A stretch of DNA of 64,000 nucleotides, from positions 4,579,795 through 4,643,794 of the forward strand of contig CAJINV010000006.1 of the NCBI GenBank assembly GCA_905178155.1. Direction: 5' to 3'. A program made the translations under genes and the position numbers. Under the pieces are notes generated by a model. It was not told where the DNA came from and ran no database searches. It saw only the letters and a list, made by a program, of their open reading frames with translations. Positions 1 to 54,300 of the stretch are shown in pieces; the first letter of the stretch is position 1; each line of letters opens with the position of its first letter. The DNA comes from Amoebophrya sp. A120. Lineage: Eukaryota; Protista; Dinoflagellata.

Positions 1-59
1 TGCGGAGCTTCGCCAAGATCGGTCGCGTCGCACGCTATTGAAGAAAACCGCGCGGGGCT

Positions 60-8122: not shown

Positions 8123-9321
8123 AGTAGGCAGCGTCTCCTCGTCCTCAAGCACACGTCTCTTTTTAATTTTTTTTTTTTTCTCGCCGCCGCGCAGCCTCCC
8201 TTTTTGCCCCTGCGGGGCTCTAAAGTGGTAAAACTCTGGGAGAGGAAGCTAGTGCACAAGGTGCGAAAACTATGAGGCCCCGCCACAACATTGCGCCCCT
8301 TCAAGCCCTGAAATGGCTGCCCAATCCCTGTCCGGGCTCAAGGGCCATGATGGCTGTAAGCCGGTGGGCCAGGGCCCCGGCACTGCTGACAAGACCCGCC
8401 CACCAACGCGTCGCAACGATCGACACCGGAGATGGGCCTGTTTTAGTGAGGGAAAATGGACCATAGCATGCTGTCTAGATATGATGTTGACGGTTTTTTG
8501 GGGAATTGGAAAAATCCGAGGAAAAAATCAATGATTTGACGCCATCTCGAGGCCAAAATATGCAGATCCCACAAAAACCGTCAACACCTCATCTAGACAC
8601 CTCGCTATGGTCCATTTCCCTCCACTCAAACCGGTGCGGGCACGGGAGCGCACCTTTTGAGCAGGCAAATCGAGCATAGCGTGCTGGCTAGATGAGGCGT
8701 TGACGGTTTTTTGGTCGATTTCATGCAAAAAAGCAGGCTTCTGGAAGACCCGATCGACCATACCGTCGTGTCTAGATGAGGTGTTGACGGTTTTTGGGGT
8801 GCCGGCAAATTTTGGGCATTTTGGTACCCAAAATTTGCCCATTTCCCTCATCCTCGAAAGTGCCGCTTTTTCTTCAGTTATGGAGAAAATTTGACAAAAG
8901 GCGCCAAAAGGTCCGAGATGGAAACTTGCAAAGCCGCACAGAGCTAAACTGGCGGAAACGCCATCTAGATGCCAGCTCATAGGCCCACATGTCCGAGGTT
9001 TAGCCACGGTTCGAGGTTTGAGCGTTCTGGCCCGGATCTAAGAGCCGGCGGCGAGGAGAAGGCACGGCAGGGGGCGGCCCCGGTAGCCGAAGTCCTACGC
9101 CGTCATATTTTGTGCAGCACTAGCTAGGTCAAACCAAGCAAGCTTCGTCGCAGTCCCGCGAGAACTAATAGCGGGAATGGGTCGACTTACAAACCAAAAA
9201 CATACCTCCAGCATACACCCAAAATTTTTTCTTTCCAAAAAACTTAAAACCGTAACGTCAACACGACTTTTTCTTTCGATAGTAGGCAGCGTCTCCTCGT
9301 CCTCAAGCACACGTCTCTTTT
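8123..9321. mobile_element. ~1.1-kb non-coding element (8164-9280) flanked by a perfect 41-bp direct repeat (8123-8163 and 9281-9321); right end resembles a family-E TIR
   Basis: AGTAGGCAGCGTCTCCTCGTCCTCAAGCACACGTCTCTTTT occurs twice; internal ~45-bp repeats in both orientations; homologous (inverted) to 40422-41690. Confidence 0.8.
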
Positions 9322-30200: not shown

Positions 30201-33200
30201 GGGAGAGCAGAAACAGGGTATTGAACGAGTATGGGTTTTGTTGACGGAAATTCATTTTGGGGCTAAAACTGAACGCTCATAGTTGTACTCTAATTAGTGC
30301 TGATTTATCAAGAAGAAGATAAACTGCACGATTACGCATAGTACGATCAACACTGAACTGCAACAGCACAGATATCAGCCATAATTTACAAAGGTGAAGC
30401 TGCTATCCCCTTCGTGGACCACAGTACTAGCACGACCCCCGGGGCCGCCGTCGGCCACGCCCTGCTGGGTCGAAATGCCAGCAAGGATTCAAACCTCTCG
30501 AAGACCTCCTCCCGTATCCTGTGCAAAAGTGTCGTACTTGCAGTAATCGCAGTGATGCATGACAGATCCGCTATCTTAGGGAAATCAGCATTACAAATTC
30601 CACTTTCCTTCTAGGCAAAATTTGTCATGCAGTCTATACTAGTGCGATACTTAGTTTTGCAATGCATATCCCGTCCCTACGAACTAAACGAGTACTTGGC
30701 CCAGATTCTCGACCGGACGGCGGAGTTGTTGCAGCAAGACGATGATTATCCTGTGCAAAAGTATCGTACTCGTATTGTAATCATGCATTACAAATCTTTT
30801 TCTTAAGGTAAATCTGCATTACAAATTTTTATTTCTCTTGCTGAGAAAAAATGCATTTATACGAGTACGATACTTCTTTTGCACTGCATAATGATCAGAA
30901 CAATGCTATGCAGAAGGAGAATTTCGAATTGTTGGTGAAGCAGAAGCTGCAGAAGATCTTCGACGAAGAAATGAAGCCGAAATTCAACGAGAATTCGAAG
31001 TACACGACCGTTGGCTCCGGGGAGAACTTCCTACTCCGAACGAAAACCCTGTACGACTTGCTCGCCATGTTTCCTGACTTTGTGATGGAGTACACGTTCA
31101 CCGAATACAACACCTGGTCCAATGAGAAGCTGCGGAGACGGTTATGCAATGCAAAAGTATCGCACTAGTATGAGTTGCATTACAAATTAGCCCCCATGTT
31201 GACAAATTCAATTTGTAATGCTGATTTACTTTGAGAAAGAGACTTGTAATGCGTAAACGCAATTACTACGAGTGCGATACTTTTGCAACTCATAACGGTT
31301 GCCCTTCGAGATGAAACTCCAAACCGCGGTGGCCATTTCTGTTGGGGAATTGTCACGGGACTTGACGAAGAAGATGAAGGAAGAAACTTGCGTTTTGGAA
31401 AAGAAGGTGGATATTGGAAGCAGTGTTGGTTCTTTGGCGGGACAGAAGATGAAAAACGGAGATAATGCTATGGAAATGGACGTGGACCAGGAAGGAGATG
31501 TGAAGATTAACACTGGTACCAGCACAACCGAAAACAAGAAAACGACCACCATTTTTAACGGCACTTCGTCCAGTGCTACGGATGAACAAGCGGAGAACAT
31601 TATGGAAGCGTCAGGTTTGAAATCGACAAAGTTGAAATGATTTGAATTCGTCATGCATAAAATGGATACCAGTTGGAAGCCCAATTTCCAAGCGGCGCAT
31701 GACAAATTTTCGGAGCACCGGAGTCCAATTTGTCATGCTGTTGTGGCACAGAAGACTGCTTTTGTCATGCTTCTTCAGCAGCTCTATCCCAAACCCTAAA
31801 TAGGCTCATAATCTGCCTCGATTGCCATCCCTGCAAGTGAGGCACTCCATGTCTTGCAATTTATGCATGAGGAATTATTTCGACTTTGACGAAGATTTCA
31901 ATCCTGACGCTCCCATAAACATGAAGACCGACACGAAGAAAAACTCCTCCAAATTCAAGCGCGGGCGCGGCGCAGCGGGAGCGGCGTCTCAGATGTTGAT
32001 GAACAAGATCGCGGAGGAAGGTAACAAGCAGTTGCACGTAGTTCCCCCCTTCGGGGCCAACAAGACGAAGCACGGACTGCAGCTCGCGGTGTCGCACAAT
32101 ACTGTTGCGGGACTACAACAATTCGTTGCAGATCCTTCTGCTCTTGGCGTTCTTCTTCCCAAGCCGTCCTCCGCTCAAGAACATCATCTACTCCCGGGAC
32201 CGCGCGCGGGGAAGAAAAATTACATGGCTGGGTCGGTTCCTTTGTCCTCTGCGCCGGGGGTCACTGGCACCGGCGGACCTGTTGTAGCAGCTTCCACCAC
32301 GACGACCACGACTTCTCTCAAGCGGCCGCCGCCCGTGCTTGTGCCGCACAACAAGGGGAAGGGAAAGGGTGCCACTGCCGCGGCTGCTGGTACTGTCCCT
32401 GTCGCGGGGGCGATGTTGCCGTGTTCCGGGACGACGGCGGGTGGTGGTCCTGCTCAAAAATTAGGGCCTGCTGTGCTGGAAGCTGCTCCTGCCGGGAAAG
32501 AACTTGTTCATCTGCAAGGCGATTTAGTAGAACAGGTCCACGACGAAGATGCTGATGCTGTATCAAATCATGTAAAAATGTCTGGGTCTGGAAGATTCTG
32601 ACACTTGTCATGCACGTTTTGCATTAGCCCTGATGTCTGTGATGCATGCCCTAGCATCACAGATTTTTTGAGAGCTTCTTGATGCCTATTCCGCATGACA
32701 AATGCCCTCTCCGCGTAGCAAAAATTACATTCCCTTTGGTACTCATGCAATACAGATTTTTTTGGAATCCAAATGCAGCATCACAAGTTGCATTCTTCCA
32801 GACCCAGACATTTTTACATTTGATATGCTGATGACGAAGACGAACTACAGGGTCCGTCTGCGAAGAAGATGAAAAAAACTCGGCGTTCCAGCAACACCGG
32901 TGCAGCAACTACGCTAACCAAGATGAAGATGAAAAACGCGTCTGCTGGGCAACAGCAGCACGGCAAATCTACGAAGAACAAGCGGAGGTCTTCTGTTGGG
33001 ATCGACGTGCCCTCTGTGATGACGGCTATCGAGGAAAAGCTCCACAATCCGCGACTGTCTCTCGAACGTGACTTACAGCTGAACAACCCGATTCGCAATT
33101 CCACCGATTACCAAATTGATTGGAACAACCTGGGCACGATGAGAAACGTCACCAAGCAGTTCGATTCCCTCTGTCACAACCTGCTATTGTCGTCCAACAA

Positions 33201-36200
33201 CAGTATCAATAAAACTTCTGGAACAACAGCAGGCGTTTCTTCGATTGTTGAGTTAGTCCCGGGGACCACCATCAACTTCGCGCACGAACTTGTTGGTTTC
33301 TCGACGTTTTTGCTCCGGGGACAGACTGTGAAGAAATTCTGTGCCGAATCGGACGAATCCGCGGTGGGGTATTCCGTTTTGGTCACGCACATCTGCGGGG
33401 TACCGACGAAGAAAACTTCGGTTCCGATGGATCTGTTCAACGATTTTCTGCCGAAAAAAAGCCAGATGGAGGTTCCGCAAATGCTGGAGAACCTGTTACT
33501 CCGAAACGAGAAGCACTTCTTATTGCTGCCGGTTGAAGCGATTCTAAACGTGATTGTCGCTCTGGAGACCGTACGCATTGCAAATATGTCTGGGTCTGGA
33601 AAGCGCCAGGCTTGTCATGCATGTTTTGCATGACTCATAATGCCTGCAATGCATCGCCTAGCATCATATGTAGTGAGGTCACCGAACGGTTCTAACCGGG
33701 GAGTTTTTTTGACACCCAGCCAGCAAAACGACCGGCAGTTTTCAAGCGGCCGAAAGCGTTTTTTGACATAAAAAATTTTCAATTATCAAGCGGGTGGGGC
33801 TTTGATATCAAACAAGCCCGGTCGAAAACTATCGATTCGCACTTGATAAAACGACGCAGGGGAGCCGGCAAAAGGGGCGCCCTTCTGAGGAGCCCACCGC
33901 CTTAGTTCCTGGCGATTTGGGGCGCCCAAAAAGAGGCGCGCAAAAAGCGCGCCCAAAATCAGAACAGCGAAACAGCATGGCACGGCCGCGATTTCGAAGC
34001 ATTTTGGGCGGCCGCGAAAGCGGCCGCCTTTTCGCCGGTTTCAGAGCCTGGAGAGCTTTGCAAAAAGCGCCGGCGTGAAAAATAAAAACGCAAAAGGGAA
34101 AAAGCGCGCCACACGCGCAAAGCCAACCCGCATGCTACGGGCCCGATTTTTCTTCGCTTTTTGGGCGCCCCCCGTGGCGCCCGGATCGGCCCCATAGCAT
34201 GGGGGCTCGCTTTCGGAAAGGAATTTTGGAAATGTGCCAAAATTTGTGATGTTTCTCAAGTGACCGCCATGCCGTGCGGCATAACGTTACTCGCGGCGGT
34301 ATGGCGAGCCCAGAAAAAGCAAAACCGCGGCCAAGGCGGCGGGCGGAAAAAAAAACGCCCACGACCTCACTACCCCCGCCCCGGCGGCTATATTTGGCAG
34401 ATTTTTAGCAGGCTTCCTGATGCTATTTTTCCGCGTGACAAATGCCCTTCCCGCGTAGCACAAACTGGACTCCTCTTGTTGTTGGTCATGCACTACAGAT
34501 TTTTTTGGAATCCAAAGTTAGCATCACAAGTTCCAACTTTCCAGACCCAGACATTTTTGCAGAGGATAAACCGCGCAGCGGCCGGAGAACTTTCTGTACT
34601 CGTGTGTGGCTCGGTTGCTTCCGGTCCGGTTTAGCCTGGACGAGGCGAAACGGGAGAAATTGTTCAAGGACATCACGTATCCTGTGCAAAAGTATCGTAC
34701 TCGTAGTAATTGCAGTCATGCATTGCAAATTTTCTTCTCAAGGTAAATTCGCATTACAAATTTTCTTGCCCATGCTGAGGAAATTTGTAATGCATTTATA
34801 CGAGTGCGACACTTTTGCAATTCATATCACGGTTGACAACGCGGAATTTCTGGGAAAATTGATGCGCAAGTTTGCGCGGAAGATGCACGGGAATGAGAAC
34901 GTCAAGAAGTGGTTTGATCAGCTGCAGTTGGTGCTCCCTCTGGCGGTGTACGACAAAATTGATCCGCCGAGCAGCCCGAAAGATTTGATGGTGGACGAGG
35001 AGAACGACGCCGGTAGTCCGAGTGTGGTGTCATTTGATGTTGCTGGTGGAAAAGTCCTCGGTGGAAAGGGAGAAGGAGTTGTCGAAGATGACATCTTCAA
35101 GGGTAAAAACACCACTACCACTACCACGACGACCACGAACGCAATGCTCTTGACTACCGCGACTTCTACCGCTCCTGCTGCGGAAAAAAAGGAGGCGATT
35201 GAACAAGCGACGGCTCCGGCCCCGGCGGGCGGTCAAGATCGCATGGCTCTCTGCTCGACCGGACCACCTCCCGGTGGAGTTTTTGACGAGAAGCAAGAGA
35301 AAGATGATGTTGACAAAAAACCGATTTTTACTTCCGCTGCTGTTGCTGCTGAAGCGGAGGAGAAAATTAGTACAACTGGAATGAAGAAGATTGACGAGAA
35401 GATGGAAGACAATTTTGCTGAGGCGATGGAGTTGAAAACCGAAACTATGATGGCAGTAGTTGAAAAGGACAAGATCGAAGACGAAACTGTGGATGATATC
35501 AAAACGGATGTTAAAAATCTAGCAAGCGCTAAAAATACTTTTACGGGTAATAAACAGAGTAGTGATTTCGATTTGATTTTTGGGAACTACAAGCAGGACG
35601 ACGACGAATGTAGGCCCTAAAAAATCCATCTCTACGCCCATCTTTTCAAAATTTGCTCTACCGGTTTGCCGCCATTTCGTTGCATTCTCATACATAAAGC
35701 TCCTCGAGCAGCTCGACCGCAGACCCTGGCTGGCCATATTGCCTGACAGATTTTCCGGGTCTTGTTTTTCTTTTTGCAGCTTGGTGGAGGAGTGTGGTAG
35801 GAGTTGCGAGGCCAACGCGTCATGCACAGCTCCGCGACATGCAGAAACAAGAACAAAACCGGGAGAATGCATTCACTCGGCCGAGAAAGAAGTTGACAAG
35901 ATGCAGCCACGCAAGTTGCCCATCTTTTCAACTTTGAAAGCTATCAAATTTTGAAAAGATGGTCTTTCTGCATCTTTTCAAATTTTGATACGTGGCTGCT
36001 CACTTTCCAAATTTTGAAAAGATGCTGAAGAAACATCTTTTCAAAATTTGACAACCCGAGCAGCGCAAATATCAAATTTTGAAAAGATGCTCTTTCTGCA
36101 TCTTTTCAAATTTTGATTGATAGGTGGCTGCTCACTCTCCAAATTTTGAAAAGATGCTGAAGGAGACATCTTTTCAAAATTTGACAACCTCAATAACGCA

Positions 36201-39200
36201 AGCACTTGCTTTGTTGAGGTTGTCAAATTTTGAAAAGATGTTTCCTTCAGCATCTTTTCAAAATTTGACAACCTTTTTGACAACCCCTTTGATGAGGTCT
36301 CCCAAGAGGCTATTAACTTAACCTAATCCGCATGGTATGGTGGATTTTGATGAACCTATTTGGGAACCTCTTTGGTGCGCCTAGACAGAGAATTGTTGAC
36401 GAAAGTCCAAGGCTTTGACTTGCGCCCCAGCTGGCGGGTCGCCAGATGGTAAGCAAAGCCGTGCCTCTGGCGACATTTGTTTGCTTGCTTCTTTTGTGGC
36501 TCCGAAGATTGCGAAGATGCCCCCTCAGCAAGTTTGCGAATTTTGAAAGCCACGCAGAAGAGTAGGCTGCTCACCCTTTCCGCGGCTGTCGAAATTTGAA
36601 AAGATGCGCTGGTAGTATCTTTTCAAATTTTGGAAGCCACAGAAGACTGAGCTGTCCTCCCTTTGCGTGGTTTCTCAAATTTGAAAAGATGTTCCTTCTG
36701 CATCTTTTCAAATCCTGAAAACCACAGCACAGCCAGCTACCCTCCTCGTCTGCGGCATGTAAAATTTGAAAAGATGCTCCTTCAGCATCTTTTCGAATCT
36801 TGGCAACCTCAGGACACAAAACGAATCGGCTCTTCTGCGGCTTCGAAGATTGAAAAGATGCTCCTTTAGCATCTTTTCAAATTTTGAAAACCACAGACGA
36901 GTAAGCCGACCCCGTCTTCTGCGGCTTCAAAAATTGAAAAGATGCTCCTTCAGCATCTTTTCAAATTTTGAAAAGCACAGAAGAGCAGGCGACCCTCCTC
37001 TTTTGCGCCTTTTGAAATTCGAAAAGATGTTCCTTCAGCATCTTTTCAAATCCTGGAAACCACAGAAGAGTAAACTGCTCGGGTCTCTTGTGGCTTCGTT
37101 ATGGAAAAGATGCTCCTTCAGCATCTTTTCAAATTTTCCAGGTCAAAGGCCACGCGCTTCAGATTTGATTGGGAACTACAAGCAGGACGACGACGAAGCC
37201 CGCTACATTGCATACCGAATGAACTACCTAGCTTCTTCGCAGCACTTCTCAGTGGCTAAAGTCGGAGCTACCCGGCGCTGCTGCTCCACGGACTTGCCTC
37301 GGAGCGCCCCTGCAGCCTGGAGGTGCTGCAGCAGGTCCTCCTGCTGTCCAGCCGCTAGACAATGGGCCTCAATCTGTGCAGGTCGGTCGGAGCCAAGGGC
37401 GCAAATGCAACCGGCCGCGGCTGCGTTTCCACTTGTTTCTAATGTCGCGCAGCCGTGCGCGCGTGTTCCGGCAGGCGCGCGCGCCTTTTGCCTTTGCGGC
37501 TCGTTCTTGAAAATGCGAAAGGCCAGAGAGCCTTTCGGAAAGGCTTCCCGGAGGGGTTCCGGGACCCCTTTTGGGGAGGGGTAGCACCATCGTGATTCGA
37601 AGAAAAAGCGATAGGCTTTTTTTTAGGGTTCCGGGCGCCCCTCCGGCCCTCCCTTTTTGGGAGGCCTCCGGAAAGACCTTCGCGGCCAACATATGCGTGT
37701 GGTACCCGCAAGAGACGACGACGCCAGGGCCTGTGTAGACATCTTGTGGAGCGTCTGCAGCCTCACACCCTAACCCAGGCCATAGCGGCAAATGGCTGCA
37801 CGGAGAAAGCAATCCGGAAAATGGAGCAATATACTGCGCGCGCCCGGCGCTTTCTAAGTGAAAACGCCAGCCACAAAAGAACCCTCTGTGCCTCGCCCTC
37901 CTCCGCGTCAATACTCACTTACCTACTAGAGCACTGCTGCTGACAAGCTAGCCAAAACAAACCGCGCTCGAGTCAGCCCCTCACTTGCGGGCACAGGTTT
38001 ACTAGCTTCGCGCCGCGAAAAAATGCGCGCAGAATTTTTTTTACGGTCTGAGGCAAATACAAGTTTGATGCCCCCATAGATTTCGATTTGATTGGGAACT
38101 ACAAGCAGGACGACGACGAATCTGTTTAGGCGCGGCGAATCGAGCTTCGCTGCGTTGGCCAGCTTTGCCCTGCTATAAACGGGGCCTGCCAGAATTCTGC
38201 CTCAGCAGCCTCGCGCCTATGGTGCGCGCACTGCCCGATGACAGATGGCGCCGTGGGGCACGTCAGGCGAGGGGGCCAACCCGCGGCGGGTTTCTCATCG
38301 CCATTCGGCTCGGGGCCGAAGGCGCGGGCCCTCCAACAATGCAGACCATAACGCGTGAACTGTGCGCGAATGATATCGGCGAAGTTGGAAAAAGGCCTGC
38401 ACCGCCCCGATTCTGCTTAGGGTTGCTGCCCATCAGGGCGCGCGATACACGGCAGCAGAGTGGGGCTCGTGCGAGCGCGGGCGGCGGTTGGATTATCAAC
38501 ACAGCCGCCTGCGACACGAATGGGTGGGGGCGGCGCGCTTCTGATTCAGCCCCCATTCCGGCCGTTCTGAATATAGGGCCGAATAGCCGCGCCAAGGAGC
38601 TTTCCTACCGCGCCGCGCGCCATCTTTCATGCCCCCGACCAATGGAGTGGGCTCTAAATCGTGCGCCCCCCCTTCAAGATTCGGCAGCCCAGGACATGTG
38701 GGCTTCGGTGCCTGCGCCCGGTGGTTTGGGGTGCAAAAGTGATTTGGTGGTCTGTTCTATGGTATTTGGGTGCGCTTTTTTGCCGTCCTACTTGGGGTTG
38801 GCTCACGTGAGCAAGTTTGCCGACGCGTCGGCTCCAAGCAATATGGGCGAAGCAGCCTAAAATCCAGCGGAGCGGCGATGGCGGAAGCGCTATGGCAATG
38901 TCATTGGCGCTCTTGCCGTCGCGCTCGGCAGCTTGCGAGCCTGGTGGCGCTGGCATGCCTCGCGGTGGTGCGCACTTTGGTCACATGGGCGCCCACCCGG
39001 AAAAAAAGGGCTTCTTCGTTTAATCAAGAAGCAATGCGGCCGACAAGGAGAGGCGGGCGCCTCGGTGCCCAACGTTCGGTGGGGATTGCGGCTCCTGCTT
39101 CAAGCTACTGAAAAAGTCGGGGTGTCGCGGTGACTTCTTCACAGAAAGAGCGCACACTAGTACAGCTCGCGCGATTTTTAAATTTAATTGTTGAGCCCGT

Positions 39201-42053
39201 CATAGATTTCGATTTGATTGGGAACTACAAGCAGGACTACATGAAGGCCCTCGTAAAAGACCCACCGTGGGCGCGCGCCTTGGCTGGTCCGCTATCAAAA
39301 AAGCGGCAGGCTTCGCAGCCGATATCGCACTCCGCCGGGCAGGTTGCGTTCTGAGGTGGCGGGCAGGCTATTGCCGGCGCGCTGTGCCGAAAAGCTGAGC
39401 CCGCGACGCCATTTTTCTAGAAGTCCCGGCCCCGGGTTTCCGGATGTTCTTCGGATTCTGCGAAGAAAGGTCCGTCCGCGAGACCCCCAAAAGGGGTTTT
39501 TTCCGGAACCCTCGTAGCAGTGGGGGAAGCTTCCAAAAGTAGTGTTTTTGGCTACCCCTCCCGGAGGGTCCTCAGCAAGGGTCTCGCAGAGGAGAAAGGC
39601 TCCAGCTTCGGAAGCCCTCGGCGCATCTTTCCGCCGGGGCCCCGGGCATCCCGGCCTGCCTACGGGCGAAGTTCGCATAGGCCCCAGGGCCTACCGGAAC
39701 TAGAGGCACGGAGGAGAAGGCGTAGGCCGCCGGGGCCTGCCGCTAGTTTACAGCTTTGCCAGCGCGCCCGCCCCCCTCAGTTCGTTGTAGCTCTATCGCA
39801 GCAAAAACTGAGTGGGAAGGCGGGGGCTTTGATGTTCCCAGCGCCGTGGGGGTGGCGGAGTGAACCAAGCAGCCCGGCGACTTGGTCGCTCGCGTATCCT
39901 CTGTCGAGGGAGCTGCGCGAGGGGTGTCGGGCGAAAAGCGCAGAGCCGCCGTGGATGTGACCCAGAGCCAGCTCGGCGACTTCTTCTGCCTCATCGAAGA
40001 GTCGGGAAGCGCCACCTGCAAATGCGCCGCACATTGGGAGGGCAGGAAGCTGCTAGAAGCCGCTCGGCTTCTCTTGGGGGACATGATTACCTCCGAAGCC
40101 AAGCGGTCTGCGCCAAAGACTCGTGAATGACCCGAGTCCGTGCGCGGGATAGTCCTCGCTAGGGCGAAGTGGCCGCCTTCTTAGCTAGATAACTTGATAC
40201 GCATGGCCCAAATGCATTGCATGCGTGACCAAGGCCCAGCACAAAAGCCAAGCAGCGCAATGCCTATGCCCGGAGACCCTGAAAATTTTTTATCCACTTT
40301 GAAAAGATGCAGTTAGTATGGCCATTTTGAAGCACGCGATATTGTCGTGCTTCAAAGATTTCGATTTGATTGGGAACTACAAGCAGGACGACGAAGATGA
40401 TGATGAATTGAAGCACGACAATATCGAACAAAAAAATGTTAACGTTACGGTTTCAGCGATTTTTGAAACAAAATTTTTTTTTCCGCTCAATGGCTTTCTT
40501 TTCATGTAAAGATCAACACTTTTCATGATACTAGCTACCGTGGGACTCTGTTGCAGCGTCATCAGTTTGAGCTAGCTAGTACAAAAAGTATTCCATTCCG
40601 CGCCCGAGTCTAGCGCAACCTCCGGAGGAAGACCACGGGCGCCGCGGCTCTGACTGTTTTGGCATGATATGGCGGTGATGTTGGCGACCTTTCGCCATGA
40701 AGTCTGTCATGCAAGGCGTGCGTCATGTGTCGGCATATGAGTCGATGCGACAACCCCCCGAAAGGTCCGCGCAACTCTCCACCATATCGCCACCTTGGAA
40801 CTGTATAGGCTCGCTGCGTTTCTAGACATTGCGCTGCAGCTTTTGAGCCATCTCGCCAAGTTCTCTCCATGAAGCAGAAAAGCTGTGACTTCGAGGATGG
40901 GGAAAATTGGCAAAATTCGGGCACCAAAGTGCCCAAGTTTTGCAGTCACCAAAAAAACCGTTAACACTTTTTAGAATGGGCGGTATGATCGCCCCAGCCT
41001 GCCAAAAGCAGGCTTTTTCGTATGAAAATGCCAAAAAATGACCGTTAACACTTTTTAGACAGCACGCTATGGTCGATTTATCCTCCTCAGAGCCCGTGCT
41101 TCTTGGCCTGCAGGGTTTTGGACAGGGTAAGTCGATCATAGCATGCTGTCTAAAAAGTGTTAATGGTTTTTCTGGGTGACTGCGAAATTTGGCCTCAAAT
41201 TGATGGCAAATCATGGTTTTTTTCGGTGGAATTCCCTATGATCCGAAAAAACCGTTAACACTTTTTAGACAGCACGCTATGATCGATTCTGCCTGCCAAA
41301 AGCCGGTCCATCCTCGGCGTCGATGGCGGCGGCGAGGATGGTGGCAACTCGAGAGCATCTCTCAACCAGGTGGGTTGCACTAGCTGCCGTCCACGAAGCG
41401 CCCCCAAACAGCTGAAGAGCAGGCTCCGCCGGCACCGAGCTGGTGTGGAGGCGATGCGACCGGGTCAAGGAGCCCACGTGGCGCGGAAGGTTCGTCATGG
41501 AGCGGCCCCGGTAGGCGAAGTTCCAGGCCGTCAGGCCTTGCGCACTAGCTAACTCAAACAAAATTAGCTACTTCAGAGTCCCACAATAGTTAAGAGGGTG
41601 AGCGGGTCCCTTTAGGCATTCACATAATGCCGCCAGTGAACCCACAAAAAATTTTTAATGCAAAAAATGCAAAGCCGTAACGTTTTCGATTTGATTGGGA
41701 ACTACAAGCAGGACGACGAAGATTATGATTTTGAATTGAAGCAGGACACGACACAACTGATGAAGGCGGTTGTTCCCGAAGGAGGTGACAAGTTTTTTTT
41801 TCGAAATGACAAGAAGGAAAAGATCGCTAGCTCCGGAGATGGCCACGATGAAAACGAAAATAAACCGGAGAAGATTTGTACGGAAGATGAGCAGAACGAT
41901 GACGATTTCAAGTTCGGAAATGTTGAAAAGGACGAGAAATGCAGCAGTAACTACGGTTTTGTGAACAAGGATAAGGAAGAAAAGCAGGAGAAGCTGAAAT
42001 CGCCGGTGCACCAGGTGGCCGGTCCCGAGGATGTCGATTTTGACGAGCTGTAA
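27246..42053 (+). CDS. Gene 4: large low-complexity (K/N/A/S-rich) hypothetical protein. Exons 27246-28557, 28718-29530, 29691-29734, 29908-30217, 30394-30514, 30674-30746, 30896-31142, 31300-31600, 31923-32560, 32831-33571, 34574-34677, 34832-35608, then orphaned C-terminus 41721-42053 (~1,937 aa if the array is removed; ~1,830 aa ending at 35620 if not)
   Basis: Removing ten introners and one GT-AG intron gives a continuous frame; the coding sequence resumes in frame after the last array repeat. Confidence 0.7.
28558..28712. mobile_element. Introner family B
   Basis: TSD CGCGG/CGCGG. Confidence 0.9.
29531..29685. mobile_element. Introner family B
   Basis: TSD TCCGA/TCCGA. Confidence 0.9.
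29735..29902. mobile_element. Introner family D
   Basis: TSD TTCCG/CGCCG; frame restored. Confidence 0.82.
30218..30393 (+). other. Canonical GT-AG intron in gene 4
   Basis: G|GTATTG...CAAAG|GT joins the flanking ORFs in frame. Confidence 0.65.
30515..30668. mobile_element. Introner family B
   Basis: TSD TCCCG/TCCCG. Confidence 0.9.
30747..30890. mobile_element. Introner family B
   Basis: TSD ATGAT/ATGAT. Confidence 0.9.
31143..31294. mobile_element. Introner family B
   Basis: TSD ACGGT/ACGGT. Confidence 0.9.
31601..31917. mobile_element. Introner family C, opposite orientation to 3612-3919
   Basis: TSD AACAT/AACAT. Confidence 0.92.
32561..32825. mobile_element. Introner family A
   Basis: TSD TGCTG/TGCTG. 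Confidence 0.92.
33572..34568. mobile_element. Introner family A carrying a nested ~730-bp insertion (~33667-34397)
   Basis: Both halves of family A present; TSD GACCG/AACCG; frame restored (LET|AQRPENF). Confidence 0.88.
33667..34397. mobile_element. Nested non-coding element with 11-bp inverted repeat GTAGTGAGGTC (33670-33680) / GACCTCACTAC (34363-34373)
   Basis: Interrupts the family-A consensus between GCATCA and CAGATTTTT. Confidence 0.7.
34678..34826. mobile_element. Introner family B
   Basis: TSD TCACG/TCACG. Confidence 0.9.
35949..37140. repeat. Hairpin repeat array: 12 copies of TTTGAAAAGATG-N7-10-CATCTTTTCAAA (5 at ~63-84-bp spacing, 7 at 84-85-bp period)
   Basis: Copies start near 35949, 36012, 36077, 36144, 36228, 36595, 36680, 36765, 36850, 36934, 37018, 37102. 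Confidence 0.9.
40422..41690. mobile_element. Long family-E-like TIR element (cassette 5 of the array)
   Basis: Begins TATCGAACAAAAAAATGTTAACGTTACGG, ends GCCGTAACGTTTTCGAT; ~170-bp imperfect terminal inverted similarity; inverted homolog of 8164-9281. Confidence 0.75.
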
Positions 42054-48331: not shown

Positions 48332-51300
48332 ATGACGCTCTCCTCCCACGAGCCAAACGGAGGCGCGTCGAGCCTGGCTGTGGCACCAGACAGAGCAGCC
48401 GTGTTGCTGCACCAGGCTGAGCCTAGTCCAGCAGGGCGGGGTGGAGGAGCAGGAGGCTCTAGTGCTACTGCTAGTACCAGCAAACAGAATAGTACCGGCA
48501 CTGTTGTTCCTACTACCACCACCACCACCACCGCCGGCGTGAAAAACATCGCCAGGATTCCGATCCCTACCTCCAACTCCCGACGCCCTAGTATTGCGTC
48601 CGGAAACAGCTCCGCGCGGAGCCGGATCTGCAATAATTTACTGAATGTGAATCAAAGTCTCGGAGGGGTGAGAAGGTTATCCGTGCATTCCCGGGACACG
48701 GAGCGAAGCGGTTGTTCTACGGCTCGGGGTGGAGGGTCTACTTGCCACCAACGACCAGACAGTGCGGGTCATTATCAAGTGTAAAAATGTCTGGGTCTGG
48801 AAGATTCTGACACTTGTCATGCACGTTTTGCATGAGCCGTGATGTCTGTGATGCATACCCTAGCAATACAGATTTTTTGACGGCTTCTTGATGTGTATTC
48901 CGCATGACAAATGCTTTCTCAGCGTAGCAAAATTTGCATTTCCTTTGGTACTCATGCAATACAGATTTTTTTGAAATCCCAATGCAGCATCACAAGTTGC
49001 ATTCCTCCAGACCCAGACATTTTTACATTTGATAATCATGCGGGTGGAACAACGTCGTCGAAAATAAGCGCCGCGTCAGTACTATGCGTTGCAAAAGTAT
49101 CGTACTCGTAGTGATTGCAGTCATGCATTGCAAATTTCTTTCTCAAGTCGAATTCGCATTACAAATTTCATTTCTCATGCAGCGGAAATTTGTCATGCGA
49201 TTTATACACGTGCGATGCCTTTCCCTTTCGCGCAGTTCATAAGTACTACCCCCGCCGCTCTTACCACAGCAACTCTCCTCCGGGCAGATTACATCAGTCC
49301 GAAAAACCTCGCTGCAGTCCAGCCACATTTCCTCTCAGTTTTCCCAGCCGGGCAGCGATTTGTTTTCACACAGCGCGGTGTCGTCGACGGGAACGTCGAT
49401 GTGGTTATGCGTTGCAAATTTGTAGTCTGGGTCTGGAAGGCGAAAGTTGCAACTTGTGATGGTGTCCCAGGATTCTAAAAAAAATTTGCGTTGCATGACC
49501 AGCAAGAGCAGGAGTTCAGTTTGTGCTACGCGGAGAGGGCGCTTCTGATGCAGAATAGGTATCCGGAACAGGGAGCCATAAGCTGTGTTGCTAGTTCATG
49601 CATTACAGGCGTCATGTGTCGTGGAAAATATGCATGACAAACCTGGCAATCTTCCTGACCCAGACATATTTGCAGTGGATAGTGGTATCACAGCGAGAAT
49701 TTTTACCTAGATGACGGCGGGGCCGGTCTGCAGAGCCGGTTGGGCCGGTTGGAGTACCAGAATTTGGAATTTAATTATATCACGAAGAACAAACTACGAC
49801 AGTTGCCCCCAATTTACACGACGACCATGGGGCCTGGATCATCAACATCGTCGACAACGGCTAGCACGGCCAGCGCATCCGCAAATCAAAATTGTGCTGG
49901 TGCCAACGCAATAAACAAGGCTACCACAGTAGATCGCCCGTCCATTTTCACGGTTGGGAGTTCGGCGACAAAGCGTCACGGGGGGTTCTTCCAGGAACAG
50001 GAGAATGCGAAGTACGTTACCGAGGCGGAGAACACCTATGAATACCATCAAAAGCTGCTTGCCTCTAACAACGCAAACCCCACGACTAGCTATTTGCTCC
50101 CGGGGTTGATTTATTCTCTGCAAAACTATCGTACTCGTATAAAAAAATGCATTACAAACTTTCTCAGTATGAGCACTGGACTTTGTCATGCTGTTTTACC
50201 GTAAGGACAAGATTTGTCATGTATAGTTGCAATTAGTACGCTACGAGTGCGATACTTTTGCCATGCATATGATTTTTCTGAACATGCTCGTCCTGGGGAT
50301 CGAAACCGACGCGCACGCGGATACGTTTACCTTTTCACCGTTGTTCTACTCGTTAGAGTATGAATTGCGAATAGAAGTATCGTACTAGTACTAATCGCAG
50401 TCATGCAAGACTACAAGTACCTTTACCTTTTTTGATGGTAAATCCGCATGACAAATTTCATTTCTACTCATGCTACGGAAACTTGTCATGCGAATTCTGC
50501 TACTACGATACTTTGACTTTTCCAGTGCATATAGAGGTGTTTTTCTTCCTCGCGTTTTCCTTCGAATTGTATCTGCGGTTGCGGAAGGACTTCCAGAAAG
50601 AAAGTGAAGAAGACGAGGACGAGATGGAGGACGAAAGGGCGTCAACTTTTTCAAGAACCTCCGGAACGGGTGCTGCCAGTGTGTCCAGAAAAAGTTCGGA
50701 AAGTCGGAACGTTTTTGACAACAAATCCTCTATGCGCACGTCGGGGACGTCCAGTGGTAGAACGAGAGGCTTTATGCATTTTTGCAAATATGTCTGGGTC
50801 TAGAAGGATGGACGCAGGGTTTGTCATGCTTGTCTGGCATGACGAAAGAGTTTGTGATGCGTGTCCAAGAAGAGACCCTTTGGCTTGTCATGCAAAACGC
50901 AGGTTGTCAATGTCATGCGGAAAGCGCAACACTTCTAAGCAGCGAAAATATTTCTCATGCTTGGCTGTGCATAATACAGAGAATTCACTAGTCACAACTC
51001 AGCACAACTACAAGTTTCCAGACCCAGACATGTTTGCACTCGATAGGCTTGCAGTCGTCCGTGTATTCCCAGCGGGTCGAATTGACGGAAAACTGGTATG
51101 CGAATTACGGAGATGATAATCATGATGAGGACGAGCAGGAGCCAACTTCTGATGCTGGTGCCGATCATCGTCATCTAGAGGGAGATCGAGACCATCACGC
51201 ACGAGCAAATGAGGTGGTCGCGATCAGTGTCGACCAGATGAACGGATTCCAAAAGCGGTCGGCGTTTCTCGGAAGAAGAAAAGGCAGCTCTAGTTCTTCT

Positions 51301-54300
51301 TTTTCGGGAAGCAGAACTGCGGGGGATAGCAAATACAGGAGCCGTAGTGGGGATGAGTTTATGGCAGAAGGTAAATTGAGCTTTTCAATTTGTATGTACT
51401 ATAATTTCAGAAATTGCATGTTGAAGTTATACCTCTTCGTTGCGTGGTGCTTTGTCATGGTTTTCTTACAACCCTAAAGAGAAAGTGCGAGACTGTCGCA
51501 GTATCATCGAACATTCACCTCCCGACGGCACATGATTATTCACACAGACCCTGCAACTCCAATCACTATAACATACAGGCCCGGAAGATGAATTATATCA
51601 ACCAGACCTGCCAGGCCAGAGTCCTCGAATGAATTCGTCGGACATAATACGAAACGGCAAGGATGGAGAACATCAGGCTGCTGCCGCAACAGGTCCTGTG
51701 GAAGATTCCTCCGAAAGTAACATGCTGGAGAGCCGTAGAGACGAGGATCATGGCGATGCAGCAGCAGCAAAAGCTGCCTCCTCCTCCACTTCGCGAATGA
51801 ACAGCAACTCTGCCTCCCCCCCTGTTCTCCGCCGAGCGGGATCCCGGATTAGGAAAAACAGCATTAAAGAAAAACCGCGGATCCACCGGATGTCTAGCAC
51901 TTGCTCCATGCCGGCGATAATGGATCATCGCGACGTATGGCGTTCTCAACTGTTACATTCTCAAGTGTTACATGAATTTGTCATGCAAAAACACTATCAC
52001 TCTCAACACGATCACGCCTTCTCCGCATGACAACTTCTCGACGCGCTAGATAGCATTATATTCTGCTCCAAACCTGTAATGCAAAAGGCGCAACGTTTTC
52101 CCTTTCACTTTTGCCATTCTTGCATTACAAATTTCATGTAACAGTTGAGAATGTAACGTTTGAGAACGCCATACGACGTCGGTGCGACTGCAGAACGAGG
52201 ACAGTGCGACGATTTCGCGTTGGAAGAGCAACAGCGAGGACAGCAATCCCGGATATCAACAGCTCGCCGCCGCAATTCGCAGAAATCGCGGAACTCCCGG
52301 GTAGAAAATTCCACCAGGGCTAACGCGGAACAAGAGGTGGACAACAAAACGGACGCGAGCTTGCGGAAGTACAGCAGTCTCAGGTCGCGGATGTTTCAGA
52401 GTTCGGAGGATTTGGGAGAAAACGAGATTGACAATCTAGAAGATGTATCAAATGTAGAAATGTCTGGGTCTGGAAGATTCTGAGATTTGTCGTGCGTGTT
52501 TTGCATGACCCAGGATGTCTGTAATGCACGACCGCGCGTCACAGATCTTGAGAGGGCTTCCCGATGCCTACTCCGCATGACAAACGCCCTCCCCACGTAG
52601 CACAAACTAGACTCTTCTTGCTGGTCATACAATACAGATTTTTCTGGAGTCCAAAGCTAGCATCACAAGTTCCAATCTTCTAGACCCAGACATTTTTACA
52701 GTTGATAAGATGAGGAAGAGGAAGAAAAAGCTGCTCGGATGAACAGGAGAAGGGCAGCAAGCATGCTCCGTCGTGGGCAGTCCTTCATCGCGAAAAAACC
52801 GACCTCCATGCGGCGGCAAATGTCCATGTGCAGCAACGCCGGTGGAGTCATCACATCCTCAACCAGCCGGCGTGCAGCGTCTTCTGGAGCCGGCGGTGGC
52901 GCGCGGGCGACAAGGACGAACAGCCAAGTGTTCGCCCGCAACTCTGCGTGTTTTAACCGGCCCATTGCTATGGGTATGGCACGCCGGATCTCGCAGCAAG
53001 GACGGAATTCAACCAGTAACAGCACCTTTCACGAAAGAGACAACAACAACGGAGGTGTCAGCGGGGCGGAGGAAACGAGTGGTGCGGACAATGTCAGTCG
53101 AGGTACTACTGGAGCTGGTGGAAGAAGTTCCGGAAATGGGACAAGACGGAGCAGAACCTCGGGAAATCTGCAAAGCAAATCGACGATGAATTTGGAAACC
53201 GGGTCGAATGGTCCATCAAATTCAAAATCCCCCTCGAAGCTACCCCGGCGGCGCACCGGGTCAAGCTTGTTCAAATCCCGGTCTCGTGGTTCGAGCTTCA
53301 CGCGCTCAAAGTCGAGTTTATACAACCGGAGTCGCAGTAACCTCTATGGGTGGAGCGGGAGCCGGAAATATTATGGTAGTAACCGGAATAGCAGGTTTTT
53401 ACTGGTCGCACAACAACTCCCACAACAAATGAAGCAGAGCTTTCTCGTGGTGAGGCAGCGGCTCACGCAGATCTCCCGATATGAAATGCAAAAGCCTCGT
53501 ACTTACTAGTAGAAATCGCATGACAAATTTACTCAGCATGAAAAATGAAATTTGTAATGCGGATTGAGGTTGTAGATTTGTAATGCATGACTGGGATTAG
53601 TGCCACGAGTACGATGCTTTTGCACAGGATACCCGAAGGATTACGACCACTTTGACCCGGCCCAGTCGGAAGCTCAGCAACAGTTTTGTCATGCGGAAGT
53701 CAATATGAACTGCAAAAGTAATGTACTAGTGTAAATTGCAATACAAATTAGCTCAGCATGAGAACTGGACTTTGTCATGCTGTTTTACCTTAAGGACAAG
53801 ATTTGTCATGCGTACTTATTTTGCAATTAGTACGAGTGCGATGCTTTTGCAGTGCATAGCTAATCTTACCCGCAAAGAAGAAAGCGAAGAACTTGCTCCG
53901 GGGTTTCGCGGTGAAGGCAAAACAAGCCTGGACCCGGTATTCAGTCATTGCGCAAAGAACGATACTGCGGCGAGAGAAGCTGCAGAGGCAGAACACGAGG
54001 ATGGCTCCGAATAAAGAGCCGAAGGACAGAGAAGCTGCGAAAGAAATTTTGCAGAAGTCAAAGTCAAATTTATCGTCGCAAACTAATAACCCTGCTGCAA
54101 CGACGAGTAAAACCAATATCAAAAACCTGGCGGTACAGCAAGTGGGTACCTTGCCGTCCCCAACGGATTCCCACAACAGCACGGCGACCTACGAAACCAA
54201 TCACACACAGAACTCGCAACAATCCTGCTCGACTGCAGGTGTGAGAAGCAACACGACAAACAAAGCTGCTCTTTTGAAGAACAATCAAACCCGGTCCTAC

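What the first reader, a model, noticed from the sequence alone, without database searches (positions are those of the whole stretch)
35564..41720. Repeat-cassette capture array inside a coding exon: six ~40-bp direct repeats separating five different ~1-kb mobile-element-like cassettes
Seen: the exonic sequence encoding DFDLIGNYKQDDDE occurs at 35564, 37162, 38079, 39205, 40357 and 41684. Between the copies lie five non-coding inserts of 1553, 881, 1084, 1119 and 1288 bp. Gene 4 runs into the first copy and its acidic C-terminus (41721-42053) resumes in frame after the last copy, so the whole 6.1 kb is an insertion at one site. Four copies start at the same base (GATTTCG) while their right ends are ragged. 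The cassettes carry TIR-like ends or repeat arrays, and one has a solo homolog at 8164-9281. Inference: successive integrations at one fixed site, each duplicating ~35-60 bp of target, give a repeat-spacer architecture formally like a CRISPR or integron array but with kb-sized TE-derived spacers. It could be a site-directed TE trap or archive, or a recurrent break-and-capture hotspot. The 5-bp-TSD introner mechanism does not explain it and I know of no description of it. No integrase is visible in the window.
Basis: partly seen in the sequence, partly recalled or inferred. Interest (0 to 1): 0.92.

Follow-up and report, generated by a model that had tools for sequence, protein, structure and literature searches.

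The report
Stacked transposon halves with long target duplications
One coding exon of a parasitic dinoflagellate gene has taken in five pieces of different jumping genes, each insertion re-copying about 42 bases of the exon; this comes from an unusual, error-prone way of inserting transposons, not from a CRISPR-like capture system, and it has created two new introns, a micro-exon and extra peptide repeats.

Summary
Six copies (K1-K6) of a ~42-bp exon segment separate five cassettes, and the segment occurs nowhere else in the 115.5-Mb genome (probably Amoebophrya sp. A120).

Each cassette is a fragment of a different multi-copy TIR 'introner' transposon family. One terminus is intact (one nucleotide short in C4). 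In four of the five it abuts K exactly; C4 is separated from K by a 31-nt templated filler. The other end is truncated and joined through microhomology or filler.

The same families also insert canonically with 5-bp duplications. About a third of copies of one family, and all examined copies of another, carry 16-75-bp duplications with the same junction pattern.

I verified three more arrays elsewhere in this genome. One had been flagged by a first-stage note on other DNA; further such notes are untested. In one array no order of simple nested duplications can produce the boundaries.

RNA contigs show two non-canonical introns (35609-40344, 40420-41699), not one. K1, a 75-nt micro-exon (K5) and most of K6 stay in frame.

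Best reading: one-ended transposase integration, then repeated breaks at resident ends repaired by re-copying K and capturing transposon fragments. The CRISPR/integron-like reading is not supported. Why exact boundaries are re-used is only partly explained.

The parts
35564..35608 (+). K1: first copy of the duplicated exon segment (x=1..42, with a private TTT insertion). It is continuous with the upstream exon and is the last 15 codons of that exon in the mRNA.
   Evidence: (the RNA contig carries the TTT and the upstream exon)
35609..37161 (.). Cassette 1: left 1.55 kb of a ~2.3-kb TIR element family (termini TGTAGGCCC...GGGCCTTCA, canonical 5-bp TSD elsewhere). The left terminus is intact and abuts K1 exactly. 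The right ~800 bp are missing. It is joined to K2 through a 7-bp microhomology GATTTGA (37162-37168). It contains the family's hairpin-repeat arrays.
37162..37198 (+). K2: copy x=7..42 (+G), intronic
37199..38078 (.). Cassette 2: 978-bp TIR introner family (TATGGGG...CCCCATA) lacking its left 98 bp. The right terminus is intact and abuts K3 exactly.
38079..38120 (+). K3: complete copy x=1..42, intronic
38121..39204 (.). Cassette 3: low-copy element. The right terminus (...GTCATA) is intact and abuts K4 exactly. The left end is truncated: two other copies continue upstream.
39205..39241 (+). K4: copy x=1..33, followed by 4 unmatched nt (TACA); intronic
39242..40325 (.). Cassette 4: right part of a ~2-kb TIR family. 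About 740 bp are missing on the left and there is an internal ~200-bp deletion. The right terminus lacks only its last base (family ...GGCCATA).
40326..40356 (.). 31-nt templated filler: a fold-back copy of the K5-end/cassette-5-start junction. It forms an 11-bp hairpin with itself and a 19-bp stem with 40408-40426. It carries the 3' splice site of intron A (40344|40345).
40345..40419 (+). 75-nt micro-exon (25 codons, SCFK + K5 motif + ..ELKHD): the last 12 nt of the filler plus K5
40357..40421 (+). K5: copy x=1 to about 75, diverged from K6 at a few positions beyond x=42. It shares the shorter GACGACGAAGAT form with K6.
40422..41683 (.). Cassette 5: TIR family TATCGAAC...GTTCGATA. The left terminus is intact and abuts K5 exactly. 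The right end lacks about 20 nt and is joined to K6 at the microhomology TTCGAT. It is an inverted relative of the solo element at 8164-9280.
41684..41756 (+). K6: last copy (from x=3), continuous with the downstream exon. The first 16 nt are intronic and the exon resumes at 41700.
35609..40344 (+). Intron A (4736 nt, non GT-AG; boundary uncertain by 1 nt), containing C1, K2, C2, K3, C3, K4, C4 and part of the filler
   Evidence: joint in two RNA contigs; K1 lay outside the stretch laid, so its part of the contig was laid on K3
40420..41699 (+). Intron B (1280 nt, non GT-AG; boundary uncertain by up to 2 nt, so it may start exactly at the TAT terminus at 40422), containing C5 and the first 16 nt of K6
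41700..42053 (+). Terminal coding exon of the host gene (acidic C-terminus, stop at 42051-42053)
8123..9321 (.). Single-unit version in the same window: a cassette-5-family element (8164-9280) between two perfect 41-bp target copies. One terminus is intact and abuts the copy; the other end is truncated.

Best explanation
The array is the scar of a non-canonical, one-ended way of inserting cut-and-paste introner transposons, repeated at one exon site. It is not a dedicated capture system.

Shown: each cassette is a fragment of a different TIR family that elsewhere inserts with a 5-bp duplication. One terminus is intact, or one nucleotide short in C4. In four of the five cassettes it is joined to the nucleotide to a copy of the target (K); C4's nearly intact end is separated from K by a 31-nt filler. 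The other end is truncated and joined through microhomology or templated filler. The same pattern, with 16-75-bp duplications, is common among solo copies of these families.

Inferred for a single event: the transposase (probably an integrase-like DDE enzyme) transfers only one element end into the target. The free target 3' end is extended for a few dozen nucleotides, which duplicates K. Host alternative end joining then attaches the other, damaged element end.

Inferred for stacking: an intact terminus left next to K keeps attracting the transposase, which re-cuts exactly at the element/K junction. The broken ends re-copy K from the sister chromatid or another K copy, so the boundary facing the resident end is exact. 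Fragments of other excised transposons are captured between them.

Shown at RNA level: the pre-mRNA is spliced as two non-canonical introns that keep K1, K5 (a new 75-nt micro-exon) and most of K6 in frame. The protein therefore gained about 2 extra copies of the DFDLIGNYKQDD motif.
For: The repeat is unique to the locus and all cassettes are multi-copy.

Junctions in this array. C1's left terminus is exact at K1, its right end is truncated inside the element, and there is a 7-bp microhomology with K2. C2's right terminus is exact at K3 and it lacks 98 bp on the left. C3's right terminus is exact at K4 and its left end is truncated. C4 is truncated on the left and lacks 1 nt on the right, followed by a 31-nt snap-back filler templated on the K5/C5 junction. 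C5's left terminus is exact at K5 and its right end lacks about 20 nt, with a TTCGAT microhomology.

The same families use two modes. For the C2 family, of 24 copies examined (23 elsewhere plus this array's cassette 2), 12 have 5-bp TSDs and both ends intact, and 8 have 21-59-bp TSDs with one exact end and one truncated or padded end. For the C5 family, all 7 copies examined have 16-73-bp TSDs. A C1-family copy has a 50-bp TSD plus a 21-nt filler, most of it templated; another has 5 bp.

Three further arrays have the same pattern. In array 3 no order of simple nested duplications fits, so K copies must have been re-synthesised from other K copies.

The filler copies the K5/C5 junction, so the C4-side event came after C5. 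K1-K3 share one sequence form and K5-K6 another, which fits serial descent rather than one burst.

Splicing and frame. Integrase-core (rve) domains in long open frames exist in the genome, and A120 introners with integrase-like ORFs are published (PMC12130899).

Precedent: retroviral integrases that insert only one end give a normal junction at that end, a truncated other end joined by host enzymes, and much larger host duplications (PMC5041404).
Against: The re-cutting model explains arrays 2, 3 and 4 and the shared left boundary (x=1) here. It does not explain why K1, K2 and K3 all end at the same base (x=42), because only C1 has an intact terminus there. That needs an extra assumption: a lost resident element with both ends intact, K x K unequal exchange, or an intrinsic hot spot.

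No transposase has been linked to these particular families.

Retroviral one-ended integrations give duplications of hundreds to thousands of bp, whereas here lengths cluster at 16-75 bp.

The RNA evidence rests on assembled contigs from runs only guessed to be RNA; the raw-read RNA run gave no reads. The order of the cassettes could not be checked with long reads.

Confidence: 0.6

Rival explanations
1. Intrinsic hot spot. Two fixed nick positions (before x=1 on the top strand, after x=42 on the bottom strand) are specified by something within K, such as sequence, DNA structure or a bound protein. Every K copy inherits them, so independent long-duplication insertions keep hitting the same two phosphodiester bonds. 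This is essentially the first reader's 'successive integrations at one fixed site'.
For: All five events are compatible with breaks at the same two positions: a = 1, 1, 1, 3, 7 and b = 42, 42, 42, about 35, about 75. The departures sit at truncated ends, where resection is expected. Canonical 5-bp insertions also sit exactly on long-duplication landmarks elsewhere. L009 spans a 27-bp tandem junction, and an introner lies at x=1-5 of the first K in array 3. Both hint at strong local target preference.
Against: There is no common motif at the boundaries of the four arrays or the solo insertions. In array 4 the two insertions are offset by 11 bp. In array 3 the boundaries cannot be produced by serial insertion alone. 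Duplication lengths differ from site to site (16-75 bp), so any determinant would have to be site-specific.
Confidence: 0.18
2. Excision-gap refilling plus K x K recombination. A founder element with both ends intact and a 42-bp duplication was excised repeatedly. The clean ends K(42)| and |K(1) were each time refilled with a transposon half. Differently filled units were then stacked by out-of-register K pairing, through unequal sister or allelic exchange or slippage during gap repair.
For: It is the only scheme that gives both exact boundaries (x=1 and x=42) for C1, C2 and C3 without coincidence. Elements with long duplications and both termini intact, which would be excisable, exist: L039, L015, L057 and both cassettes of array 4. 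A 27-bp tandem K|K junction, as expected from an emptied site, exists at L009.
Against: It needs many steps per array. No array with repeated identical cassettes was seen in the four arrays I examined or in the first-stage notes I searched. Recombination on 42-57 bp of homology is usually inefficient. Cassette 5 has a different right boundary.
Confidence: 0.12
3. One catastrophic event. A single break was repaired by replication-based template switching (MMBIR-like, or shatter-and-stitch) that alternated between the K template and several transposon copies.
For: Microhomologies and multi-round templated filler are typical of such repair. Exact re-use of K ends could come from run-off on a broken K template.
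Against: K1-K3 and K5-K6 carry different sequence forms, and K1 has a private insertion. The filler shows that C5 was already in place when the C4 junction formed. Intact element termini joined without microhomology are not expected from template switching.
Confidence: 0.05
4. A dedicated repeat-spacer capture system (CRISPR-, integron- or att-site-like) that archives mobile DNA.
For: The only support is the formal repeat-cassette-repeat architecture, and the fact that several such arrays exist in the genome (first-stage notes).
Against: The repeats are local exon sequence that differs at every array. No recombinase lies nearby and the cassette ORFs have no Pfam hits. K is absent from free element copies. 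The junctions are end-joining scars. Solo insertions show the same duplications.
Confidence: 0.02
5. Assembly artefact: alleles or paralogous insertions concatenated by the assembler.
For: The published A120 assembly keeps Illumina scaffolds ordered on Nanopore contigs (PMC7789003). The k=31 contigs I could lay break at every K, so they cannot prove the order.
Against: RNA contigs contain K1, the K5 micro-exon with its unique filler, and K6 in one molecule. A DNA contig spans K5 into C5. Four arrays at unrelated loci obey the same junction pattern, which a mis-assembly would not create. K (42 bp) is shorter than a read.
Confidence: 0.03

Closest known systems
Aberrant one-ended integration by retroviral integrases (ASLV vectors with one defective end; HIV-1 with sub-optimal strand-transfer inhibitor or weak integrase mutants; PMC5041404)
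   Same: One element end shows a normal, exact junction. The other end is often truncated and is joined by host enzymes. The host DNA is duplicated far beyond the canonical 4-6 bp at the aberrant end. Extra element or host DNA can be captured.
   Different: Here the elements are TIR DNA transposons acting as introns in a dinoflagellate. Duplications cluster at 16-75 bp instead of hundreds to thousands. The pathway accounts for about a third or more of fixed copies in at least two families. Events stack at one site. The enzyme has not been identified.
Introner elements of Amoebophrya and other dinoflagellates (PMC7789003; bioRxiv 10.1101/2020.10.14.339549; PMC12130899)
   Same: The element families are of the same kind: TIR-bounded and non-autonomous, with a 5-bp duplication in the canonical mode. 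Insertion into exons creates non-canonical introns.
   Different: The introner papers I read report direct repeats of 3-8 nt. Text searches of the A120 genome paper and the 2025 introner survey found no long duplications, truncated halves or stacked arrays. Here the intron boundaries are set by one true terminus and by a pseudo-terminus in repair filler, and part of the duplication is exonised.
Interrupted gap repair after P-element or Ac/Ds excision, and polymerase-theta-type end joining (as in T-DNA integration); from my own knowledge
   Same: Repair synthesis that stops and restarts. One-sided deletions that retain one terminus. Microhomology. Templated and snap-back filler. Capture of unrelated DNA at the break.
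   Different: Those systems are not known to build repeat-cassette-repeat arrays with kb-sized cassettes from several families. Whether this genome has a polymerase theta was not tested.
Parallel intron gains with flanking short direct repeats in Daphnia (Li et al. 2009, from my own knowledge)
   Same: New introns arise from break repair, with duplicated flanks and recurrent use of the same sites.
   Different: The Daphnia repeats are 5-12 bp, the inserts are not transposon halves, and no stacking within one allele is described.

Membership tests
CRISPR / integron-type repeat-cassette capture array | The repeats are a system-specific recombination or processing site, the same at every array of the system | tested here: not met
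   K is host exon sequence unique to this locus. Arrays 2, 3 and 4 use their own local sequences.
CRISPR / integron-type repeat-cassette capture array | An adjacent dedicated integrase (Cas1-Cas2 or IntI) | tested here: not met
The 9 ORFs scanned in and next to the array (five inside cassettes, four host-gene pieces) have no Pfam hit. Not every ORF of the window was scanned.
Site-specific (att x att) tandem accretion by tyrosine or serine recombinase | The free element carries the same core sequence as the target | tested here: not met
   None of the other genomic copies of the five families contains K.
Amoebophrya introner elements (Farhat et al. 2021) | Terminal inverted repeats at both intron ends | tested here: not met
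   The families have TIRs, but each cassette here keeps only one terminus. Intron A runs from C1's left terminus to a pseudo-terminus in filler. Intron B has a truncated right TIR.
Amoebophrya introner elements (Farhat et al. 2021) | Direct repeats of 3-5 nt overlapping the exon/intron boundaries | tested here: not met
   The duplications here are 33 to about 75 bp. Canonical copies of the same families do have 5 bp.
Amoebophrya introner elements (Farhat et al. 2021) | Removed from the transcript as a non-canonical intron | tested here: met
   Two RNA contigs (about 6.8 kb, depth about 40) skip 35609-40344 and 40420-41699, with non GT-AG ends.
One-ended (half-site) DDE integrase/transposase integration | One element end is joined exactly at its terminal nucleotide | tested here: met
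   C1, C2, C3 and C5 here. Also the solo copies L072, L077, L078, L013, L041 and the element at 8164-9280, and the cassettes of arrays 2-4.
One-ended (half-site) DDE integrase/transposase integration | The other end is truncated or padded and joined by host end joining, with a host duplication much longer than canonical | tested here: met
   Truncations range from 1 to about 800 bp. Microhomologies are 3-7 bp. Fillers are up to 31 nt. Duplications are 16-75 bp against the canonical 5 bp.
One-ended (half-site) DDE integrase/transposase integration | Catalysed by a DDE integrase/transposase that recognises these termini | not testable with these tools
   rve domains in long open frames exist in the genome, and integrase-like ORFs in A120 TIR introners are published. 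No link to these families was shown. The candidate 5.5-kb full-length relative could not be fetched whole.
Polymerase-theta-type alternative end joining | Microhomology and templated (direct or snap-back) insertions at junctions | tested here: met
   A 7-bp GATTTGA microhomology. A 31-nt two-round snap-back filler. About 15 nt of templated filler at L015.
Polymerase-theta-type alternative end joining | A polymerase theta homologue is present and required | not tested
   No search was made.
Ordinary nested transposon pile-up in an intron | Later elements interrupt earlier ones | tested here: not met
   No cassette interrupts another; each is separated from the next by a K copy.

The most novel reading that the evidence does not exclude
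Amoebophrya may have a previously undescribed, genome-wide insertion and repair pathway. Introner transposons are integrated by one end only, duplicating about 45 bp of target. The surviving intact end then acts as a self-renewing break site that accretes pieces of other transposons and re-copies coding sequence. Such a pathway would make new introns, micro-exons and in-frame peptide repeats in bursts at single sites, and would be a direct, observable route from transposon activity to changes in exon-intron structure and protein repeats.
Probability: 0.35. Interest if true: 0.75.

Novelty: new variant of a known kind. Interest (0 to 1): 0.6.

Why it matters
Intron gain by transposons is an active question, and Amoebophrya A120 is one of its richest cases. 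The introner papers I read describe a 3-8-nt duplication, and my text searches of the two A120 papers found no long duplications, truncated halves or arrays.

This locus and its relatives show a second, frequent mode with about 45-bp duplications and one damaged end. They also show that such sites grow into arrays.

Consequences:
- A large class of 'odd' introns and repeats in this genome is explained.
- Repair filler can supply a splice site, and duplicated target can become a micro-exon and extend a protein repeat.
- The junctions are a natural record of how a protist repairs transposase-induced breaks.
- Annotators should expect duplicated exon fragments inside long non-canonical introns.

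It does not reveal a new adaptive or defence system.

Tried and rejected
1. CRISPR/integron/att-site reading: rejected. K is local and unique, it is absent from free elements, and the 9 ORFs scanned in and next to the array have no Pfam hit.
2. K as the terminus of one tandemly inserted element: rejected.
3. A pre-existing 42-bp minisatellite with site-specific canonical insertions: rejected. There are no 5-bp duplications at the junctions, the ends are truncated, and all insertions lie in phase with the duplication end points.
4. Simple nested target duplications as a general model: fits arrays 1, 2 and 4 but is impossible for array 3.
5. A single 6.1-kb GT-AG intron (35609-41720): contradicted by the RNA contigs.
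6. Retroposition of excised intron RNA (TPRT-like): considered because of the variable duplications and one-sided truncation. It is not favoured. Either terminus can be the intact one, there is no poly(A), and canonical 5-bp copies of the same families point to a DNA transposase.
7. Raw RNA reads (run X8) laid no read on the stretch, so they gave no test.
8. Pfam on host exons: no domain, so the gene remains unnamed.
The two partial loci show no long ORF.
10. Two other direct repeats in the window (32751/34494 and 50175/53764) turned out to be internal to small introner families, not target duplications.
11. A search of first-stage notes for arrays with identical tandem cassettes found none.
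Full report
OBSERVATION. The repeat family is real. The repeat finder lists six copies of the exon segment at 35564, 37162, 38079, 39205, 40357 and 41684 (sequence read). I call the copies K1-K6, the inserts C1-C5, and number the segment from x=1 at the G of GATTTCG. A 27-nt core occurs five times exactly in this locus and nowhere else in the 115,520,608-base genome at up to 3 mismatches; the reversed control gives 0. K1 differs by a private TTT insertion. K1, K3, K4 and K5 start at x=1, K2 at x=7 and K6 at x=3. K1, K2 and K3 all end at x=42 (..GACGACGACGAA), K4 at about x=33 and K5 at about x=75. K5 and K6 share a form with one GAC fewer.

CONTEXT. The window is contig 6 of a 115.5-Mb assembly with about 50% GC. 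The genome is full of TIR-bounded non-canonical introns. This matches the published Amoebophrya sp. A120 genome (115.5 Mb, 51.2% GC, introner elements with inverted repeats of 8-20 nt and direct repeats of 3-5 nt; PMC7789003). I take that identity as probable, not proven. That assembly keeps Illumina scaffolds ordered on Nanopore contigs.

THE CASSETTES. All five are multi-copy in the genome, and each belongs to a different TIR family. I compared each with other copies and their flanks.
- C1 starts with the exact left terminus of its family (TGTAGGCCC; another copy has a 5-bp duplication CTTAA). It stops at an internal position from which seven other copies continue; where a right terminus was found in them it lies about 800 bp further on. 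The junction with K2 lies in a 7-bp microhomology, GATTTGA.
- C2 lacks the left 98 bp of a 978-bp element (TATGGGG...CCCCATA). It ends with the exact right terminus at K3.
- C3 ends with its exact right terminus (..GTCATA) at K4 and is truncated on the left.
- C4 lacks about 740 bp on the left and the last base on the right. It is followed by a 31-nt filler.
- C5 starts with the exact left terminus (TATCGAAC) at K5. It lacks about 20 nt on the right and is joined to K6 at a TTCGAT microhomology.
The filler (40326-40356) is a two-round fold-back copy of the K5-end/C5-start junction. The C4-side junction therefore formed after C5 was in place. So every cassette has one intact, or one-base-short, terminus and one damaged end. 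For C1, C2, C3 and C5 the intact terminus abuts a K boundary exactly; C4's is separated from K5 by the filler. The damaged ends are joined with the marks of alternative end joining. The five cassette ORFs scanned have no Pfam hit.

RNA. I laid reads on 35900-41899, within the 6,000-letter limit. Two assembled contigs of 6.9 and 6.7 kb, from runs guessed to be RNA and from two samples of one study, carry the following in order:
- the upstream exon and K1 (recognisable by its TTT);
- then 40345-40419;
- then 41700 onward.
This gives two introns, 35609-40344 and 40420-41699, both non GT-AG, with 1-2 nt of positional ambiguity. I translated the three exon pieces separately by reference. They are in one frame..SSDFDLIFGNYKQDDDE, then SCFKDFDLIGNYKQDDEDDDELKHD, then NYKQDDEDYDFELKQD.. 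to the stop at 42051-42053. The protein has therefore gained about two extra copies of the motif, and K5 with 12 nt of filler is a new 75-nt micro-exon. The micro-exon is closed by a perfect 19-bp stem (40337-40355 with 40408-40426, z = -4.75). The two splice sites lie within 1-3 nt of opposite positions in that stem. The 3' site of intron A follows a pseudo-terminus (CGATA) created by the filler. The DNA contigs of the likely source run cover all bins but break at each K, so they confirm junctions (for example K5 into C5) but not the order. The raw-read RNA run gave no reads.

THE LONG-DUPLICATION MODE IS GENERAL. For the C2 family I examined 23 copies elsewhere plus this array's cassette 2, 24 in all.
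- Twelve have both termini and a 5-bp duplication.
- Eight, including this array's and array 3's, have duplications of 21-59 bp.
- The other four were too complex, gapped or diverged to classify.
Among those eight, seven have one exact terminus and a truncated other end; L079 has both ends almost intact (left end 1 nt short) and a 3-nt pad at the right junction. Examples: L072 has 55 bp perfect and lacks 91 bp on the left; L077 has 35 bp and lacks 20 nt on the right; L078 has 48 bp and lacks 41 nt on the right plus a 7-nt filler. All seven C5-family copies examined have 16-73 bp. A C1-family copy has 50 bp plus a 21-nt filler, most of it templated. Two relatives of array 2's second cassette have 42 and 30 bp. 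Over all cases the lengths run from 16 to about 75 bp, with a median near 43.

MORE ARRAYS. First-stage notes on other DNA of this genome had flagged similar 'repeat-cargo' arrays.
- Array 2 (contig 6, about 464.8-468.8 kb) is one of those, and I verified it. It has four copies of a 55-57-bp exon segment and three cassettes. The pattern is the same: left terminus exact with right end truncated; right terminus exact with 7 nt missing on the left; left terminus intact after 3 unmatched nt, with right end truncated.
- Arrays 3 and 4 I found by looking where hits of different cassette families clustered.
- Array 3 (contig 8) has four K copies with extents [..45], [-18..58], [3..45] and [-8..]. No order of simple nested duplications can give these extents. 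Some K copies must have been re-synthesised from another K copy or from the sister chromatid.
- Array 4 (contig 2) has three K copies and two elements with both termini intact, with duplications of 40 and 41 bp offset by 11 bp.
Four arrays in this small sample mean that stacking is promoted by the mechanism. It is not a chance double hit.

MECHANISM. Shown: exact joining of one terminal nucleotide; damage, microhomology and templated filler at the other end; duplication of a few dozen bp; coexistence with canonical 5-bp insertions of the same families; re-use of K boundaries; re-synthesis of K in at least one array.

Inferred for a single event: only one end is transferred by the transposase. 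The free target 3' end is then extended, which duplicates K, and the other end is attached by alternative end joining. This matches what retroviral integrases do when one end cannot be inserted: a normal junction at one end, a truncated other end, and a much larger host duplication (PMC5041404). Integrase-core domains in long open frames are present in the genome, and A120 TIR introners with integrase-like ORFs are published. The link to these families is not shown.

Inferred for stacking: an intact terminus left next to K is re-cut by the transposase exactly at the junction. The end carrying the resident element re-copies K from the sister, so the boundary facing the resident is exact. The other boundary is ragged, and a fragment of another excised transposon is captured between the two. 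This reproduces arrays 2, 3 and 4 completely, and the x=1 boundary of K3-K5 here. It does not by itself explain why K1, K2 and K3 share x=42.

RIVALS. I keep three for that point: an intrinsic hot spot; refilling of the gap left by a lost founder with both ends intact, followed by K x K exchange; and a single template-switching catastrophe. The last is disfavoured by the two K sequence forms and by the filler timing. Assembly artefact and a dedicated capture system are unlikely, for the reasons given under the rivals.

COMPARISON AND NOVELTY. The introner papers I read report duplications of 3-8 nt. Text searches of the A120 genome paper and the 2025 introner survey found no long duplications, truncated halves or arrays, and a phrase search found nothing comparable. 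The single event works like aberrant one-ended retroviral integration, and the repair scars look like polymerase-theta-type joining. New here are the narrow ~45-bp duplication, its high frequency, the accretion into arrays, and the exonisation of duplicated target and filler. I class it as a new variant of a known kind (transposon-made introns and aberrant integration), of solid interest to people working on transposons and intron origin. It is not a new kind of system.

LIMITS. There are no long reads and no strain comparison. The RNA evidence comes from contigs. The transposase is not identified. 

Noticed in passing
window 8123-9321: A solo element of the cassette-5 family (inverted) lies between two perfect 41-bp target copies. 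One terminus is intact and abuts the copy; the other end is truncated and starts with a T-run.
   Followed up: yes
L013, L075, L076 (cassette-2 family copies elsewhere in the genome): Three independent long-duplication insertions are truncated at the same base, 16 nt inside the left terminus (before TTGTATTTGCC). This may reflect a staggered transposase cut whose single-stranded tail is lost before end joining.
   Followed up: partly
L009 (G000:C5:4253539-4257413): A complete cassette-2-family element has a canonical 5-bp duplication (CAGGA) that spans exactly the junction of a 27-bp tandem duplication of the flank. It looks as if an emptied long-duplication site had been re-used.
   Followed up: partly
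L065:1294-1600 (array 3, G000:C8): A 307-bp canonical introner (TAT...ATA, 5-bp duplication ATCTG) is inserted at the first five bases of the first K copy of array 3. That is within 2 nt of another K copy's boundary.
   Followed up: partly
window 35942-37140: Cassette 1 carries two arrays of ~48-nt palindromic units (TTTTGAAAAGATG...CATCTTTTCAAAA), with periods of about 64 and 85 bp. They are a feature of the whole family and vary in copy number between genomic copies.
   Followed up: partly
window 40337-40355 / 40408-40426: A perfect 19-bp inverted repeat, made by repair filler, encloses the K5 micro-exon. It places the 3' splice site of one intron almost opposite the 5' splice site of the next (fold z = -4.75).
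   Followed up: yes
window 32751-32788 / 34494-34531 and 50175-50221 / 53764-53810: Two further 38- and 47-bp direct repeats were checked. Their flanks are also similar, so they are internal parts of small introner families, not target duplications.
   Followed up: yes
window 41700-42053: The C-terminal exon already contains a degenerate copy of the duplicated motif (DDDFKFGNVEKDEK). The protein is an acidic low-complexity repeat protein with no Pfam domain in the exon pieces scanned.
   Followed up: partly
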